Shown here piece by piece: positions 1 to 241,590 of a stretch of DNA of 248,000 nucleotides. A program made the translations under genes and the position numbers. Location: NCBI GenBank assembly GCA_951406725.2, contig OX597817.1:117820001-118068000 (forward strand). Reading direction: 5' to 3'. Under the pieces are notes generated by a model. It saw only the letters and a program-made list of their open reading frames with translations. It was not told the origin of the DNA and made no database searches. Position 1 is the first letter of the stretch. Every line of letters starts with the position of its first letter. Origin of the DNA: Octopus vulgaris (Eukaryota).

Positions 1-220
1 CTCACATACACAGAGGCAAGTGCACCTTCATTGCGGGATCACCAGCATTTTATTATTTCCCCTTCTTCCTAGCTCTCCTATTCAACTAGCATTTTCCAAC
101 CAGTAGTTATGATTGACCTCTAAATCGACAAGTTTGTTTCTATTCTCTTTTTGTTCCTTTCTCCTCATGTTCCTTTCTGTTGAAGAGCGTTGGCTCGAAA
201 TGTAAAAGACTTTCTCAATT
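1..220 (+). mobile_element. Short non-coding repeat (family D) carrying an HHR-like motif; related copies at 74520-74790 and 239385-239500
   Basis: Shares cttcctagctctcct...tcctttctgttgaagagYgtWggctcgaaa blocks with 74530-74710. Confidence 0.55.
173..208 (+). ncRNA. Candidate minimal hammerhead ribozyme, A6U core variant
   Basis: CTTT-CTGTTGA-A-GAGC(GTTG)GCTC-GAAA-TG-TA-AAAG: stem I CTTT/AAAG, 4-bp stem II, GUA triplet. Confidence 0.45.
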
Positions 221-1740
221 CCAGAGCTTATATATATATATATATATAACTTTTTATAAAACTGTGCATCATTAGAAAGCATTTTAAGTCTGCTTATAAT
301 TTGACTTTAAATTTCATAGAACTCACTCCTAATACTTCATGAGGATAGTCAAACTCGCTAGGATGTCTGGAAAACATATATGTGATTTCGCTGATGACTA
401 CTGGACATTTGTATTTGCTGCAATATTTGCAGCTTTAAATAAAATTGTTCTTAGTATGAAACAATTGTACTAAACTACTAATCCATTCTTGTTGCTTTTT
501 TCTTGGTTATATACATATATGAATATATATGTGTGTGTGTGTGTGTGTGTGTGTGTGTGTGTGTGTGTGAATATGTATGTACATGTACATGTATATGTAA
601 ATATACATGTATCTATGTATGTATGTTTCGCTACATGAAGCTGCTTACTTAACAATTGTTATTTTCTCATTCATATAAAAATGTATAATTTGGCCCTGTA
701 ATTACCTTAAGATCATATAAGAACGCTGTGCGGTGTACTACTGGAGGTTAGAAATAGTGCTCATTAATAAGTACAAATATATTTACTTTTAACAACTGGT
801 CCTTGGATATGCCCTGGTAATGCAAATCGTTACGTGTATGCATTACATATGTGTTTGTGAGTGGGTGTGTATATATACTAAATTCAAATTTAAATTCCAC
901 TTGCTATAAATAGAGCCATCATTCCAAAACCAATAATACCCACTATTAAAACTCACTATGCACTGAACATAACATAACACTATGCACTGAACATAACAGA
1001 AGCAGGCTTACATTGAGTGGAATACAGAAGTAAGGAATGTGTATATCTCAGGATGAATTGATTGCACTTCTTATATGAAAATTCATACTCTGAGCTCATC
1101 AGCTGAAAATAACACTTTAACATCTATTTCTGAACTATTTGTCACATTACGTCGTGTACCTTCTTTAATTTTAAATGTCACCGCGACATTTAAAAAAAAC
1201 TTATCGTTTGCCAGTATAAATTTAAATTAAGTTTTGTTGTCTGTTTCGGTTATATTCATTGCATTGGCCGTGTATATTTTAATAGTGAGTATTGGTGGTT
1301 TCAGATCGATGAGCAAGTTTATAACAAGTGGTATTTAAGTACCCTATGGAATTTGAATTTAGTTTATATTTTACCTGTCAATGTGTAAACTTGCAAGACA
1401 CTATATTATTATTATTATTATTATTATTATTATTATTATTATTATTATTATTATTATTATTATTATTATTATTATTATTAACGATCATAATAATACTAAT
1501 TTAATTTGTATATATATATGTATATATATATATATATATATATATATATATATATATATATATATATATATATATAGAGAGAGAGAGAGAGAGAGAGAGA
1601 GAGATCAATAAATGGTGGGGTTGTGTTGACCGCACGTGGAGAAATGATAAGCAAGGAAAAATTGCAAAAATGCAGAATGCTCGATTGAAAGAAAAATTTT
1701 ATGAAATGAGAAAATGAAAAAATATATAAATATATATTTA

Positions 1741-1778
1741 TTCAAACCGGTTTTCGTCATAGTTTGACTTATCAAGAA
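1741..1778 (-). ncRNA. Candidate minimal HHR in PLE pLTR, U3:A8 variant
   Basis: Minus strand TTC-TTGATAA-GTCA(AACTA)TGAC-GAAA-ACCGGT-TT-GAA. Confidence 0.6.
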
Positions 1779-2454
1779 TGAAAAGGTTTTTTAAAAATGA
1801 GAAAGGGGAAAAAAGTTGCATTGTTTTTTGCAAAAGAATAATAATAAATATGTATAAAAATTTTAAAATAAGTACTCCGATACATTGTGAGTTGGTTGTG
1901 TATCTTGAGTTTAATGAATGTTCACGAAAAAATTACCTTGAGGTATTAGGATCCAATGGGATTAAGGCCATGTGTTGTTTGGTTTAATTTAGGATGTTGG
2001 CAAAACAGGAAGTAGTAGTAATTGTGGTTCTTCAGTTCCTGTGTTGTGAATAAGGGGAGACAACTCTTTTGGGTTCTTCAATAAAGGCTGCTGATAAAAT
2101 CCCAAATTATAGAATTGACATTTTAGCTTCATTTGCATTATCTTTTTTATGTAATTGTTTGTTAATTTAACTTTCAGATTTTAACACTTTGTTTATATTA
2201 TTTTCTAATTATATAAATTTGCATAGACAATTGCATTTCAGATTGTTATATCATAAATAATAAAGATGATGGTAATAACAACAATAGTAAAAATGATATT
2301 TAAAGAATATAAGTTTTTGCTGGAAGTGATGAATCTATGGTATCCTTATATATTTGTGTGAGTCCATCCATGAAGAATGAGGTAGAAAAGGGAAGTTTGA
2401 TCAACGAGTAGTTTGTATATTAAGTTCTGTTTGGAATTTTTCAATAAAGATATT

Positions 2455-239344: not shown

Positions 239345-239770
239345 TCACATTTTTTTCTCTCCTTGCTTTTTTTGTGTCCCTATCTGGAGCGTAGGCTCGA
239401 AACGTAAAAGACCTTTTCTATTCCTGAGCGTTATAGTTATACATCTGTTTGTTTTGTACACCACCTCTCTTCGTCTTTTCTTTTTTCGTAAACTTTCCGT
239501 ATATATATACATACATATATATATATATATATATATATATATATATATATATATATATATATATATATATATATATATATATGTATGTATGTATGTATGT
239601 ATATATATATATATATACGGAAAGTTTACGAAAAAAGAAAAGACGAAGAGAGGTGGTGTACAAAACAAACAGATGTATAACTATAACGCTCAGGAATAGA
239701 AAAGGTCTTTTACGTTTCGAGCCTACGCTCCAGATAGGGACAAAAAAAAAGCAAGGAGAGAAAAAAATGT
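239345..239770. repeat. Near-perfect inverted repeat (~155-bp arms) around (TA)n; the arms contain family D stem II/GAAA
   Basis: 239345-239505 is the reverse complement of 239612-239770. Confidence 0.85.
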
Positions 239771-240709
239771 TATATATATATATATATATATATATATACA
239801 TATATATATATATATATATATGTGTGTGTGTGTAAATTAATATGTCACCATTATTCAATAGCCAAGATAAAACTCTGATTTTCGGATGCCGAAGTGGAAA
239901 TCCACAGCAACATCTTTTCGGTTAGATGGCCACATAACCGAAGAGATGGTGTTGTGGATTTCCACTTCGGCATCCAAAACTCAGAGTTTTATCTTGGCTA
240001 TTGTATAATTGTAACATATTATTTTATAGATAAATTTTTTCTATTTACATAATATTGAGATCTCTTTCTTTCATTTGTTGTCTTACCGTTTTTACCAATA
240101 TATATATATATATATATATGTGTGTGTGTGTGTGTGTGTGTGTGTGTGTGTGTGTGTGCATGTTTGTGTGTCGGTATTTGTCTCCCAACATCGCTTGACA
240201 TTGGATGTTGGTGTGTTTATATACCCGTAACTTAGCGGTTCGGCAAAAGAGACCGATAGAATAAGTACTAGGCTTACAAAGAATAAGTCCAGGGGTCGAT
240301 TTGCTCTTCTAAAGGCGGTGCTCCAGCATGGCCGCAGTCAAATGACTGAAATAAGTAAAAGAGTAAAAGATTAAGATTATTTGTACAAATTTGTTTTCAA
240401 ACGCAGCTTTTTGTTGCTGACCTATGCATCCTTTCCTAAATTCATACGAATAACCTCAAAGGCCTGACGCACCCGTACTCACATATAGACATATATTGAT
240501 ATAATGTACCTATATATATATATATATATATAAAATTACAAATTGAGATAGGGGCTGTGAGTGCAACCCACTATGGGATAACATGTATCCAATATACTGC
240601 TAGTAAAGCACCCAACAAAGTTAATACATAAATGTTAAGAATTGCGATGCAATTAGTTCATTCACTGTATTATATGGGCAAAGGTAAAATGTTTTACCAC
240701 AAATTAATA

Positions 240710-241590
240710 ATACAAAATAAGAAAATGGAGAAATGCATCTTAATCAATAATCAACTACCAGATAATACCCAATCATATAATTTATTAAACCACTACATAT
240801 GAACATTAATGTCAAACATAATAATATAGAAGAAAACAAGGTACATCAATGAGTAATAAGATACCATAAGTACAGTATGTATAAGTGAATATAAATAAAT
240901 ACAAATATAAATATAAACTACATTTTACAGCTGTTTCAGCCATGCAGATATGGGTGCCTCATTATGCTCATATTAGCCATGCGTGGTAGGTTCATATGTA
241001 GTTATAAATGAGACACTTACAAAAATATCCCAAGGCCTCTTCAGAGATTATGAAGAACAAACTAAATAGAACATATGTATGTATATTGTTGTATATTATT
241101 ATTATGTATATATATATATATATATATATATATGTATAGGAGTATGGGTATATGCACTCATATGTATGTGTATATTATATATTATGGGTATGTACCCACT
241201 CTTGTATGGGTGTACCTCCTCTGATTTTCCTATTTAATTTAGTTTGTTCTTCATAATCTCTGAAGAGGCCTTGGGATATTTTTGTAAGTGTCTCATTTAT
241301 AACTACATATTAACCTATCACACATGGCTAATATGAGCATAATGAGGCACCCTTATCTGCATGGCTGAAACAGCTGTAAGATGTAGTTTATATTTATATT
241401 TGTATTTATTTATATTCACTTATCCATGTTGTAATTATTGTATCTTATTACTCATTGATGTACATTGTTTTGTTCTATATTATTATGTTTGACCTTAATG
241501 TTCATATGTAGTGGGTTAATAAATTATGTGATTGCGTATTATCTAGTAGTTGATTATTGATTAAGATGTATTTCTCCATTTTCTTATTTT
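240710..241590. repeat. Fold-back element with ~350-bp inverted arms, each carrying an HHR
   Basis: 240710-241060 vs 241235-241590, ~90% reverse-complement similarity. Confidence 0.82.
241256..241382 (+). ncRNA. Type I HHR with ~92-nt stem II loop (canonical core)
   Basis: ATCT-CTGAAGA-GGCC(loop)GGCT-GAAA-CAGCTG-TA-AGAT. A minus-strand twin lies at 240922-241048. Confidence 0.65.

What the first reader, a model, noticed from the sequence alone, without database searches (positions are those of the whole stretch)
173..241382. At least 8 hammerhead-ribozyme-bearing repeat families, with covarying catalytic cores
Seen: type-I HHR folds (stem I, core, stem II, GAAA, short often palindromic stem III, NUH) occur in unrelated repeats. 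Canonical C3:G8 cores: 113981, 111725, 241256, 124562, 168672. U3:A8: 1741, 18858, 66459, 71424. A3:U8: 120401, 119096. U4C: 16224, 124758. A6U: 173, 74673. Established: PLEs carry minimal HHRs that cleave as dimers through a palindromic stem III, and positions 3 and 8 form a tertiary Watson-Crick pair. Inference: three different Watson-Crick combinations at 3:8 in one locus indicate selection on ribozyme function. This would be a diverse, largely unannotated ribozyme/retroelement ecosystem in this genome.
Basis: partly seen in the sequence, partly recalled or inferred. Interest (0 to 1): 0.85.

Follow-up and report, generated by a model that had tools for sequence, protein, structure and literature searches.

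The report
Octopus Penelope-element minimal hammerhead ribozymes
This stretch of octopus-like DNA is littered with 3'-end fragments of Penelope-like retrotransposons that carry the small "minimal" hammerhead ribozyme motif already known from such elements, and the motif's internal 3:8 base pair swaps between Watson-Crick combinations, which shows it was kept by selection.

Summary
The motifs sit at the stated coordinates and are far above chance. A stem/GAAA/UH scaffold scan with a free 7-nt core gave 11 near-consensus cores against about 0.7 expected from shuffles.

They are minimal type-I hammerheads (HHRs) with a palindromic helix III. They lie on the sense strand near the 3' ends of Penelope-like elements (PLEs). 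These PLEs have RT plus GIY-YIG ORFs, a pLTR, an inverted 5'-truncated copy, a one-sided "tail" and (TA)n targets. The host is an octopod.

- **Decayed copies of real families:** 66460, 71425, 124562, 124757.
- **Not established as complete HHRs:** 168672, 241256, 74673.
- **Unresolved:** the U4C and A6U cores may be tolerated variants or decay.

The 3:8 covariation claim holds. With positions 3 and 8 free, all 14 hits in 523 kb of octopod DNA are Watson-Crick (C:G 7, U:A 3, A:U 3, G:C 1).

PLE min-HHRs and the U3:A8 swap were published in 2011 and 2014. This is a new member of a known kind. The natural A3:U8 and G3:C8 cores are the only modestly new element.

The parts
1740..1779 (-). F1 min-HHR, U3:A8: auuc UUGAUAA guca[aacua]ugac GAA AACCGGUU U^gaau. 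It lies downstream of PLE coding remnant 2404-3534 (-).
18858..18899 (+). F1 min-HHR, U3:A8 (UUGAAAA), downstream of PLE coding remnant 16461-18175 (+).
   Evidence: dimer MFE is the double hammerhead
66367..71599 (-). Near-complete Neptune-like PLE. Parts: 3' UTR with HHR; ORFs 67134-68105 (linker plus GIY-YIG), 68189-69232 (RT) and 69241-70905 (N-terminal), separated by stops; upstream pLTR copy 70939-71194 (-); inverted 5'-truncated copy 71256-71599 (+).
66460..66498 (-). F1 HHR (UUGACAA) with a 1-nt deletion in AACCGGUU-U, so H17 is lost.
71075..71113 (-). F1 HHR in the pLTR copy. It has the same deletion plus A14C (GAC).
71425..71463 (+). F1 HHR in the inverted 5'-truncated copy, with the same deletion. 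This copy carries the extra ~43-nt PLE 'tail' before (TA)n.
119096..119130 (-). F2 HHR, A3:U8 (AUGAAUA), in the inverted partner copy.
120401..120435 (+). F2 HHR, A3:U8: guauc AUGAAUA gc[gauu]gc GAA AACGGU C^gauac. It lies downstream of PLE remnant 119242-120114 (+), which is 60% aa identical to the F1 element.
   Evidence: intact relatives L001:12557, L001:8080, L009:12040
111628..114120 (.). F3 non-coding element. Arms of 755 nt (111628-112382 and 113368-114120) are 99-100% complementary. The element is flanked on both sides by (TA)n.
111725..111767 (-). F3 canonical min-HHR: ccac CUGAAGA uuguc[gaucag]gacaa GAA ACAAUUGU A^gugg.
113981..114023 (+). F3 canonical min-HHR, identical to the copy at 111725-111767.
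137669..137730 (+). F4 canonical HHR: gagcca CUGAUGA gaauu[17]aauuc GAA AUUACCGGUGAU C^uggcuu.
138018..138077 (+). Degenerate F4-like HHR (GAU instead of GAA, stem I broken), 349 nt downstream. Only the HHR segment is similar between the two copies.
124562..124613 (-). F5 HHR: canonical core, an A.A pair at the base of a 7-bp stem II, helix III ACAACUGU with 1 mismatch.
124757..124808 (+). F5 HHR copy with U4C (CCGAUGA), the inverted partner of 124562.
99199..99250 (+). F5 copy with a decayed core (UCGAUGA, GAAC).
114939..114992 (+). Decayed copy of the L003-type F5 relative; the core is lost (CAUGACG).
240922..241382 (.). F5b inverted pair. The 3' half (ggcu GAA ACAGCUGU A) is homologous to F5. 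A CUGAAGA core lies 92 nt upstream (241256-241270 and 241034-241048). The HHR junction is not supported by folding.
16224..16258 (-). F6 min-HHR with U4C: guuu CCGACGA a gag[cucca]cuc GAA ACGU U^aaac.
128498..128532 (+). F6 copy with the canonical CUGACGA core but GGAA (A13G).
6289..6323 (-). F6 copy, CCGACUA, decayed.
114311..114488 (-). F7: two 140-nt tandem units, each with cugu CCGACGA acg[ggaa]cgu GAA ACUCAGAGU A^acag (114311-114348 and 114451-114488). Each unit ends in (TA)n.
6005..6042 (+). F7 copy. The CCGACGA core and stem II are identical; helix III and stem I are decayed.
173..208 (+). F8 min-HHR-like with A6U: cuuu CUGUUGA a gagc[guug]gcuc GAA AUGU A^aaag.
74673..74708 (+). F8 copy: same core and stem II, no helix III or stem I complement.
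81088..81123 (-). F8 copy with UAAA instead of GAAA.
63491..63535 (+). F9 single copy, A6U: guauua CUGUUGA a aauga[auaua]ucguu GAA ACUGGU U^ugguac.
168677..168709 (+). F10: CUGAUGA a ggcu[..]agcc GAAAC only. Not a complete HHR.

Best explanation
The window comes from an octopod genome. It is peppered with full-length, 5'-truncated and inverted copies of Penelope-like retrotransposons (PLEs) and their non-coding derivatives.

Each element carries one minimal type-I hammerhead on its sense strand, about 40-170 nt from its 3' end. Because PLEs insert as partial tandems, the same motif also sits in the upstream pLTR.

The motif has a 4-7-bp stem I, the CUGANGA box, a 2-7-bp stem II (sometimes preceded by one unpaired nucleotide), GAA, and a 4-12-nt self-complementary helix III followed by H17. 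Helix III cannot close on itself. The inference is therefore that two copies pair through it: the pLTR and 3' copies on one transcript, or two transcripts. That gives a double hammerhead in which each active site is built from the core of one copy and the cleavage site of the other.

The proposed function (inferred, not shown) is trimming read-through or tandem transcripts to unit length.

What is shown here is selection on the fold in the lineages that were transposing:
- Positions 3 and 8 are always Watson-Crick but differ between families (C:G, U:A, A:U, and G:C in a related locus).
- Stems covary.
- Within a family only N7 and loop 2 drift.

Most individual copies in this window are dead. 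Their ORFs are interrupted and many motifs carry a disabling change.
For: - **Motif above chance:** (11 near-consensus cores against about 0.7 expected).
- **PLE identity:** RT and GIY-YIG ORFs. Their best relatives are Octopus and bivalve 'reverse transcriptase domain-containing' proteins at up to E=1e-142. Five PLE coding remnants were found, four with an F1 or F2 HHR downstream on the same strand.
- **PLE arrangement:** pLTR plus an inverted 5'-truncated copy, as described in PMC8557442.
- **Further hallmarks:** a CX4CX2C linker; a one-sided tail and a (TA)n run within 220 nt in 16 of 24 copies against 17% at random positions.
- **3:8 covariation:** 14 of 14 Watson-Crick with 3 and 8 free, and 0.35 total hits expected by chance.
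- **F1 conservation:** constrained columns variable 1/34, N7 plus loop 2 4/6, flanks 77/275.
- **F1 and F2 are sister PLEs** (60% aa). They differ by a double U:A to A:U swap and by compensatory stem I changes.
- **Dimer folding:** the predicted dimer MFE is the double hammerhead and is far more stable than two monomers, for example -42.9 against -25.6 kcal/mol for 137669.
- **Literature:** PMC4209133 for min-HHRs in PLE pLTRs, an unpaired nucleotide after A9, U3-A8, opposite-strand pairs and dimer activity. PMC11167929 for the engineered C3G/G8C rescue in an anole PLE.
Against: - No cleavage data exist for any of these sequences.
- Published PLE min-HHRs cleave poorly in vitro even as dimers (PMC4209133).
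- HHR-dead mutants of an anole PLE still insert in vitro, and no RNA-seq ends map to the cleavage site there (PMC11167929). The biological role of cleavage is therefore unproven.
- Rfam hammerhead models do not score these motifs.
- Pfam hits of the window's own ORFs fall just below the curated cut-offs.
- Only F1 and F2 are physically linked to PLE coding sequence. For F3-F9 the PLE assignment rests on motif type, 3'-end position and (TA)n targets.
Confidence: 0.85

Rival explanations
1. The U4C (CCGANGA) and A6U (CUGUUGA) cores are functional, selected hammerhead variants rather than decay products.
For: - Among otherwise intact scaffolds, the only single-change classes seen are U4C and A6U. 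U4C occurs in F6, F7, one F5 copy and L005:49915. A6U occurs in F8 and F9. No G5, G8, A9 or C3 singles were seen.
- All 3 F7 copies and all 4 core-bearing F8 copies keep the variant.
- A natural U4C viroid hammerhead keeps enough activity in vivo (PMC3088659).
Against: - F6 is 3 T to 2 C at position 4 over five copies.
- 124757 is a mutated copy of a canonical family.
- T-to-C is a common transition.
- An F8 subfamily (239378, 239707) lacks the core altogether yet keeps the stem II hairpin.
- A6 changes give low activity (A6C in PMC3088659).
- The sample is small.
Confidence: 0.25
2. Some of the HHR-bearing repeats (F7 tandem, F4 pair, F3) are non-LTR retrozymes. These are small non-autonomous tandem repeats that spread through circular RNAs, as opposed to truncated PLE 3' ends.
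For: - F7 is two 140-nt head-to-tail units, each with an HHR.
- F4 has a second HHR 349 nt downstream.
- F3-F9 have no ORFs.
- Animal retrozymes are reported to derive from PLE pLTRs (bioRxiv 10.64898/2026.07.22.740005; PMC7229834).
Against: - F7 has only two units, and each ends in its own (TA)n. That is what two truncated insertions into a microsatellite would give.
- The F4 neighbours share only the HHR segment, so they are not a repeat unit.
- F3 is an inverted pair, not a tandem array.
Confidence: 0.2
3. The motifs are chance matches or generic hairpins in AT-rich, microsatellite-rich DNA.
For: - Rfam finds no hammerhead.
- The scaffold alone occurs about 170 times with unrelated cores.
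- 122373-122427, 241256 and 168677 look like partial or chance matches.
Against: - Near-consensus cores are more than 15-fold above shuffles.
- Positions 3:8 are always Watson-Crick.
- The motifs sit at a homologous position in related PLEs in three octopod genomes.
- They are conserved above their flanks.
Confidence: 0.03
4. The conserved structure serves the element in a way other than self-cleavage, for example as a binding or positioning signal for the PLE RT/EN near the 3' end.
For: - PLE min-HHRs cleave weakly (PMC4209133).
- HHR-dead mutants still insert in vitro, and no cleaved ends appear in RNA-seq (PMC11167929).
- The motif is always close to the 3' end, where reverse transcription starts.
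Against: The conserved positions are exactly the catalytic ones, including the 3:8 tertiary pair, GAAA and H17. A protein-binding hairpin would not require these.
Confidence: 0.1

Closest known systems
Minimal hammerhead ribozymes of Penelope-like elements (Cervera & de la Pena 2014, PMC4209133; Lunse et al. 2017, cited in PMC6765202)
   Same: - Type-I topology with a short stem I.
- Often an unpaired nucleotide between A9 and 10.1.
- A long stem II in some families.
- No closed helix III, but a palindromic 15.x-16.x segment that implies dimers.
- Location in the pLTR or 3' end.
- Pairs on opposite strands a few hundred nt apart.
- The U3-A8 core variant.
- Many heterogeneous families per genome.
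   Different: - The host is an octopod, which the papers I could read do not mention.
- One family has A3:U8 with a 2-bp stem II, and a related O. sinensis locus has G3:C8. I found neither combination reported as natural.
- F5 has a conserved A.A (or A.G) pair where G10.1-C11.1 normally sits.
Neptune-clade PLEs (Arkhipova 2006; Craig et al. 2021, PMC8557442)
   Same: - RT followed by a C-terminal GIY-YIG domain.
- A CX2-5CxxC motif in the linker.
- A pLTR plus an inverted 5'-truncated copy.
- A 30-40-bp tail at one end.
- A bias toward microsatellite targets.
   Different: - Clade placement was not tested by phylogeny here. Nematis shares the linker motif.
- The tail here is about 43-55 nt.
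Natural hammerhead core variants (Perreault et al. 2011, PMC3088659)
   Same: - U3:A8 covariation occurs in nature.
- A U4C variant is tolerated in a viroid.
- Stem II can be as short as 2 bp.
   Different: Those examples are mostly bacterial, phage or viroid ribozymes with closed helices and tertiary contacts, not dimer-dependent minimal motifs.
Animal non-LTR retrozymes (Cervera & de la Pena 2020, PMC7229834)
   Same: Type-I HHRs with a short palindromic helix III in AT-rich non-coding repeats, likely derived from PLE pLTRs.
   Different: Retrozymes are tandem arrays of roughly 170-400-nt monomers with stem I/II loop contacts. Here there are mostly single or inverted copies and no arrays beyond two units.

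Membership tests
Hammerhead ribozyme, type I minimal (PLE type) | Core boxes C3U4G5A6N7G8A9, G12A13A14 and the A15.1-U16.1 pair followed by H17 | tested here: met
   Exact in F3 (111725, 113981), F4 (137669) and F5 (124562). Exact apart from a Watson-Crick 3:8 swap in F1 and F2. Not met in F6/F7 (C4) or F8/F9 (U6)..
Hammerhead ribozyme, type I minimal (PLE type) | Three-helix junction with stems I and II base-paired and open at stem I | tested here: met
   Descriptor hits with stem I of 4-7 bp and stem II of 2-5 (up to 7) bp. Shuffles give about 0 for near-consensus cores.
Hammerhead ribozyme, type I minimal (PLE type) | Positions 3 and 8 form a Watson-Crick pair | tested here: met
   With 3 and 8 unconstrained, 14 of 14 hits in 523 kb are Watson-Crick (C:G 7, U:A 3, A:U 3, G:C 1). 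The 12 other combinations gave 0.
Hammerhead ribozyme, type I minimal (PLE type) | Self-complementary helix III allowing a double-hammerhead dimer | tested here: met
   ACAAUUGU, AACCGGUU, ACCGGU, AUUACCGGUGAU and others. Cofold MFE gives the double hammerhead for 113981, 137669, 18858 and L001 A3:U8.
Hammerhead ribozyme, type I minimal (PLE type) | Self-cleavage 3' of H17 | not testable with these tools
   Needs transcription and cleavage assays or RNA end mapping.
Hammerhead ribozyme, type I minimal (PLE type) | Score above the Rfam hammerhead gathering thresholds | tested here: not met
   No hit at gathering. None at E<=10 on a 121-nt slice around 113981. My inference is that Rfam's hammerhead models expect a closed helix III and loop contacts, which these minimal motifs lack; I did not inspect the models. 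I did not treat the miss as disqualifying.
Penelope-like element (EN+, Neptune-like) | Single ORF with RT followed by a C-terminal GIY-YIG endonuclease | tested here: met
   ORFs 68189-69232 (RVT_1, 4.7e-5) and 67134-68105 (GIY-YIG, 7.6e-4) are both just under Pfam cut-offs. Homologues at up to 1e-142 carry PF00078, PF01541, PF28514 and PF26215. The ORF is split by stops, so it is a dead copy.
Penelope-like element (EN+, Neptune-like) | CX2-5CxxC Zn-finger-like motif between RT and EN | tested here: met
   KKCARSNCGTCP and KKCGRSNCGTCP, read directly in the alignment.
Penelope-like element (EN+, Neptune-like) | pLTR from a partial tandem, plus an adjacent inverted 5'-truncated copy | tested here: met
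   Direct repeat 66367-66579 and 70982-71194. Inverted arms 66367-66667 with 71256-71556, and 70939-71194 with 71344-71599. Inverted pairs also occur at F2, F3, F5 and F5b.
Penelope-like element (EN+, Neptune-like) | 30-40-bp tail at one end only, and microsatellite targets | tested here: met
   Copy 71425 runs about 43 nt further than 66460 before (TA)n, and 120401 runs about 55 nt further than 119096. A (TA)n run lies within 220 nt in 16 of 24 copies against 17% at random positions.
Penelope-like element (EN+, Neptune-like) | Placement in the Neptune clade by RT phylogeny | not tested
   No tree was built. Nematis shares the linker motif.
Non-LTR retrozyme | Tandem arrays of ~170-400-nt monomers, each with a type-I HHR | tested here: not met
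   There are only two 140-nt units at 114233-114512. The 137669/138018 neighbours share only the HHR.
Non-LTR retrozyme | Unit-length circular RNA | not testable with these tools
   Needs RNA data.

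The most novel reading that the evidence does not exclude
Octopod PLE lineages have naturally sampled all four Watson-Crick pairs at hammerhead positions 3:8. They also propagate families with U4C or A6U cores that still cleave in the dimer context. If so, the natural functional sequence space of the hammerhead core is wider than the consensus used in every genome search, and many PLE ribozymes are being missed.
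Probability: 0.25. Interest if true: 0.55.

Novelty: new member of a known kind. Interest (0 to 1): 0.35.

Why it matters
- **Annotation:** this assigns a set of short interspersed, inverted and tandem repeats next to (TA)n microsatellites in an octopod genome to PLE 3' ends. Rfam-based pipelines miss these ribozyme motifs entirely.
- **Ribozyme biology:** the window and its relatives give a clean natural experiment on the C3:G8 tertiary pair. Sister retroelement lineages carry U:A and A:U, and others carry C:G and G:C. This matches engineered double-mutant rescue and argues that the catalytic fold itself is under selection in PLEs, whose need for the ribozyme is still debated.
- **Scope:** the finding does not open a new class of system.

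Tried and rejected
- **Rfam at E-value threshold on 124 kb.** The output was swamped by microsatellite look-alikes of miRNA families (mir-297, mir-3149), with no hammerhead among the rows listed (the best 150 of each call; 154 and 111 lower-scoring rows were not shown). I abandoned it for the rest of the window.
- **Covariance model from 14 octopod HHRs.** MAFFT could not align the motifs structurally, so no model was built. Descriptor scans with shuffles were used instead.
- **Lunse et al. 2017.** The paper could not be read. I therefore cannot say whether A3:U8 or G3:C8 cores are already catalogued there.
- **PLE ORFs upstream of F3-F9.** None were found.
- **Candidates rejected as hammerheads.** 82782 (-) has a 133-nt loop 2 and an AAA/UUU stem II. 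122373-122427 (-) has a 2-nt helix III and a 25-nt loop, and its copies do not keep the core. L006:11376 is C3U of hairpin type.
- **Alternative core registers for the A6U motifs.** I considered UUGAAGA and UUGAAAA. Stem II does not form in those registers.
- **ARAGORN** found no tRNA genes.

Full report
**Observation**

The window is AT-rich (about 33% GC) and carries 321 (TA)n runs of five or more units. I read all 15 cited positions on both strands.

Rfam gave no hammerhead at the gathering threshold anywhere. It also gave none at E<=10 on a 121-nt slice around the cleanest motif. The permissive E-value mode on 124 kb returned only microsatellite look-alikes of miRNA families among the rows listed. 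I therefore wrote RNAmotif-style descriptors and calibrated them on dinucleotide shuffles.

**Is it above chance?**

A strict type-I descriptor required stem I of at least 4 bp, a 7-nt core, stem II of at least 3 bp, GAAA, a helix III of 6-14 nt and UH. It found canonical cores at 113985 (+), 111763 (-) and 137675 (+). It found U3:A8 cores at 18863 (+) and 1775 (-), and U4C cores at 114344 and 114484 (-). Shuffles gave about 0.

I then allowed the unpaired nucleotide after A9 that is typical of PLE hammerheads (PMC4209133), allowed very short palindromic helices III, and left the 7-mer core completely free. Scaffolds with unrelated cores occurred only 1.2-1.6 times as often as in shuffles. Cores within one change of CUGANGA, or with a Watson-Crick 3:8 swap, numbered 11 against about 0.7 expected. 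They fell into just four classes: canonical 3, U3:A8 3, U4C 3, A6U 2. One U3:A8 hit, at 122423 (-), was later rejected as a chance match, leaving 10.

**What the elements are**

The 66.4-71.6 kb region encodes three ORFs on the minus strand: an N-terminal ORF, an RT ORF, and a linker plus GIY-YIG ORF.
- The window's own Pfam hits are RVT_1 and GIY-YIG, both just under the curated cut-offs.
- The RT piece has hundreds of relatives. The best are Octopus bimaculoides and O. sinensis proteins at 60-80% identity, followed by bivalve 'reverse transcriptase domain-containing' proteins at up to E=1e-142. The host is therefore an octopod.
- The linker carries CX4CX2C. This is the Zn-finger-like motif of Neptune and Nematis PLEs (PMC8557442).
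- Repeat analysis shows the 3' end (66367-66667) repeated directly upstream of the ORF (70939-71194, the pLTR). It is repeated again in inverted orientation (71256-71599). This is exactly the arrangement drawn for PLEs in PMC8557442.

tblastn with these and related proteins found five PLE coding remnants. Four have a U3:A8 or A3:U8 hammerhead downstream on the same strand: 1740, 18858, 66460 and 120401. The fifth (98560-99078, minus strand) has no hammerhead assigned; the nearest motif, F5 at 99199, is on the opposite strand.

Other hallmarks are also present:
- The inverted copy runs about 43-55 nt further than its partner before the (TA)n. This is the one-sided PLE 'tail' (PMC8557442, PMC11167929).
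- 16 of 24 hammerhead copies have a (TA)n run within 220 nt downstream, against 17% of random positions.
- The inverted pairs at 111725/113981, 119096/120401, 124562/124757 and 240922/241382 have the left motif on the minus strand and the right motif on the plus strand. Head-to-head truncated PLE copies would give this pattern. The F3 pair has 755-nt arms that are 99-100% complementary, with (TA)n on both sides.
- No ORFs were found upstream of families F3-F9. They are truncated or non-autonomous.

**Families in the window** (coordinates)

| Family | Core | Copies | Notes |
|---|---|---|---|
| F1 | U3:A8 | 1740, 18858, 66460, 71075, 71425 | Last three share a 1-nt deletion that removes H17 |
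| F2 | A3:U8 | 119096, 120401 | One helix III mismatch, 2-bp stem II |
| F3 | canonical | 111725, 113981 | Inverted pair |
| F4 | canonical | 137669, degenerate 138018 | Only the hammerhead segment is similar between the two |
| F5 | canonical consensus | 124562, 124757 (U4C), 99199 (UCGAUGA), 114939 (core lost) | A.A pair at the base of stem II, also present in O. bimaculoides L002 |
| F5b | doubtful | 240922-241382 | 3' half homologous to F5; CUGAAGA lies 92 nt upstream; folding does not form the junction |
| F6 | U4C in 2 of 3 window copies | 16224, 6289, 128498 (CUGACGA but GGAA) | With two L005 copies, position 4 is 3 T to 2 C |
| F7 | U4C, all 3 copies | 114311, 114451 (140-nt tandem), 6005 | Each tandem unit ends in (TA)n |
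| F8 | A6U | 173, 74673, 81088, L003:13467 | A subfamily (239378, 239707) lacks the core |
| F9 | A6U | 63491 | Single copy |
| F10 | not a hammerhead | 168677, 146178, two L001 copies | Only core, stem II and GAAA; no stem I or helix III in any copy |

**Selection on the fold**

Three independent F1 insertions were aligned over 360 nt. They vary at 1 of 34 constrained hammerhead columns, at 4 of 6 free columns (N7 and loop 2) and at 77 of 275 flank columns. Fisher p is 8e-4 and 6e-4.

To test the 3:8 claim without circularity I fetched 11 further octopod loci: 275 kb from O. sinensis, O. bimaculoides and Argonauta hians. I scanned them together with the window, leaving positions 3 and 8 free and keeping the rest of the core canonical. 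All 14 hits are Watson-Crick: C:G 7, U:A 3, A:U 3, G:C 1. The 12 other combinations, wobble included, gave none. Shuffles gave 0.35 hits in total. The hits represent about nine independent families.

The A3:U8 core recurs in O. sinensis with an intact ACCGGU helix III (L001:8080, L001:12557, L009:12040). In L001 the pair flanks a PLE RT ORF in the same inverted arrangement. Stem I covaries between copies: auauc/gauau against guauc/gauac.

F1 and F2 elements are 60% identical in protein. Sister lineages therefore differ by a double U:A to A:U change at the tertiary pair.

L001:23011 carries G3:C8 with a 7-bp stem I and a 5-bp stem II. This matches the engineered C3G/G8C rescue reported for an anole PLE (PMC11167929).

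**Mechanism**

Helix III is a perfect palindrome with no loop. RNAcofold predicts the double hammerhead as the dimer MFE, well below two monomers, for 113981, 137669, 18858 and the L001 A3:U8 motif. In that structure helix III is intermolecular, and each stem I is formed between the 5' strand of one copy and the 3' strand of the other.

This is the dimer model of PMC4209133 and PMC6765202. Processing of tandem pLTR-ORF-pLTR transcripts is the proposed role. It remains inferred. Published PLE min-HHRs cleave weakly, and HHR-dead anole elements still insert in vitro (PMC11167929).

**U4C and A6U**

These are the only single-change classes seen among intact scaffolds, and each recurs in unrelated families. 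A U4C viroid hammerhead is known to work in vivo (PMC3088659).

Against a selected role, F6 is polymorphic with a canonical majority. 124757 is a mutated copy of a canonical family. T-to-C is a common transition. A6 changes are reported as poorly active. I leave this open at about 0.25.

**Comparison and novelty**

The following were all published in 2011-2021 (PMC3088659, PMC4209133, PMC8557442):
- PLE minimal hammerheads
- the extra nucleotide after A9
- opposite-strand pairs
- many heterogeneous families per genome
- the U3:A8 variant
- the inverted and tandem insertion architecture

I found no paper linking hammerheads to octopus PLEs. I also found none reporting natural A3:U8 or G3:C8 cores. 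However, Lunse et al. 2017 could not be read.

The finding is therefore a real, well-supported instance of a known kind, with a modest new detail.

Noticed in passing
window 181397-186542 (-): A Helitron Rep/helicase gene. A 1412-aa ORF carries Helitron_like_N (1.4e-51) and PIF1 (2e-46). A 292-aa continuation carries the Pif1 2B domain, and the two are separated by one interruption. This explains the GC rise to 0.43 at 180-190 kb.
   Followed up: partly
window 168493-168565 (+): A tRNA-derived SINE head (A box tggcgtagtggtt, B box gagttcgattcc) followed by (TAA)n and (CAA)n. ARAGORN calls no tRNA. It lies just upstream of the F10 'half hammerhead'.
   Followed up: partly
whole window, e.g. 104906-104987, 6468-6547, 28169-28252: (TA)n/(TG)n microsatellites give hundreds of sub-threshold Rfam matches to miRNA families (mir-297, mir-3149, mir-1277, mir-466). 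All are far below gathering scores and are composition artefacts.
   Followed up: yes
window 124562-124613, 124757-124808; L002:~20009 (-): The F5 hammerheads have an A.A (A.G in 99199) pair where the normally conserved G10.1-C11.1 pair sits, followed by a 6-7-bp stem II. The feature is shared between the window and O. bimaculoides, so it is not simple decay.
   Followed up: partly
L001:22965-23017 (-) (O. sinensis): A min-HHR with a G3:C8 core: uuuguca GUGAACA g gucgc[9]gcgac GAA AAUAUU U^ugacaaa. This is the fourth Watson-Crick combination at 3:8.
   Followed up: partly
L010:~60-110 (-) and ~480-530 (+) (O. bimaculoides): An inverted pair of canonical min-HHRs (ugaac CUGAAGA uugca[..]ugcaa GAA AGUAUACU A^guuca). 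The design resembles window family F3, but all three helices differ by compensatory changes.
   Followed up: no
window 112161-113325: Inside the F3 element, segments of about 40-180 nt are repeated directly at 780-830-nt spacing (86-95% identity). This suggests an additional partial copy between the two inverted arms.
   Followed up: no
window 98560-99078 (-): A weak PLE-like coding remnant (tblastn, 65 bits) lies next to the F5 hammerhead at 99199-99250 but on the opposite strand. The relation between the two is not resolved.
   Followed up: no
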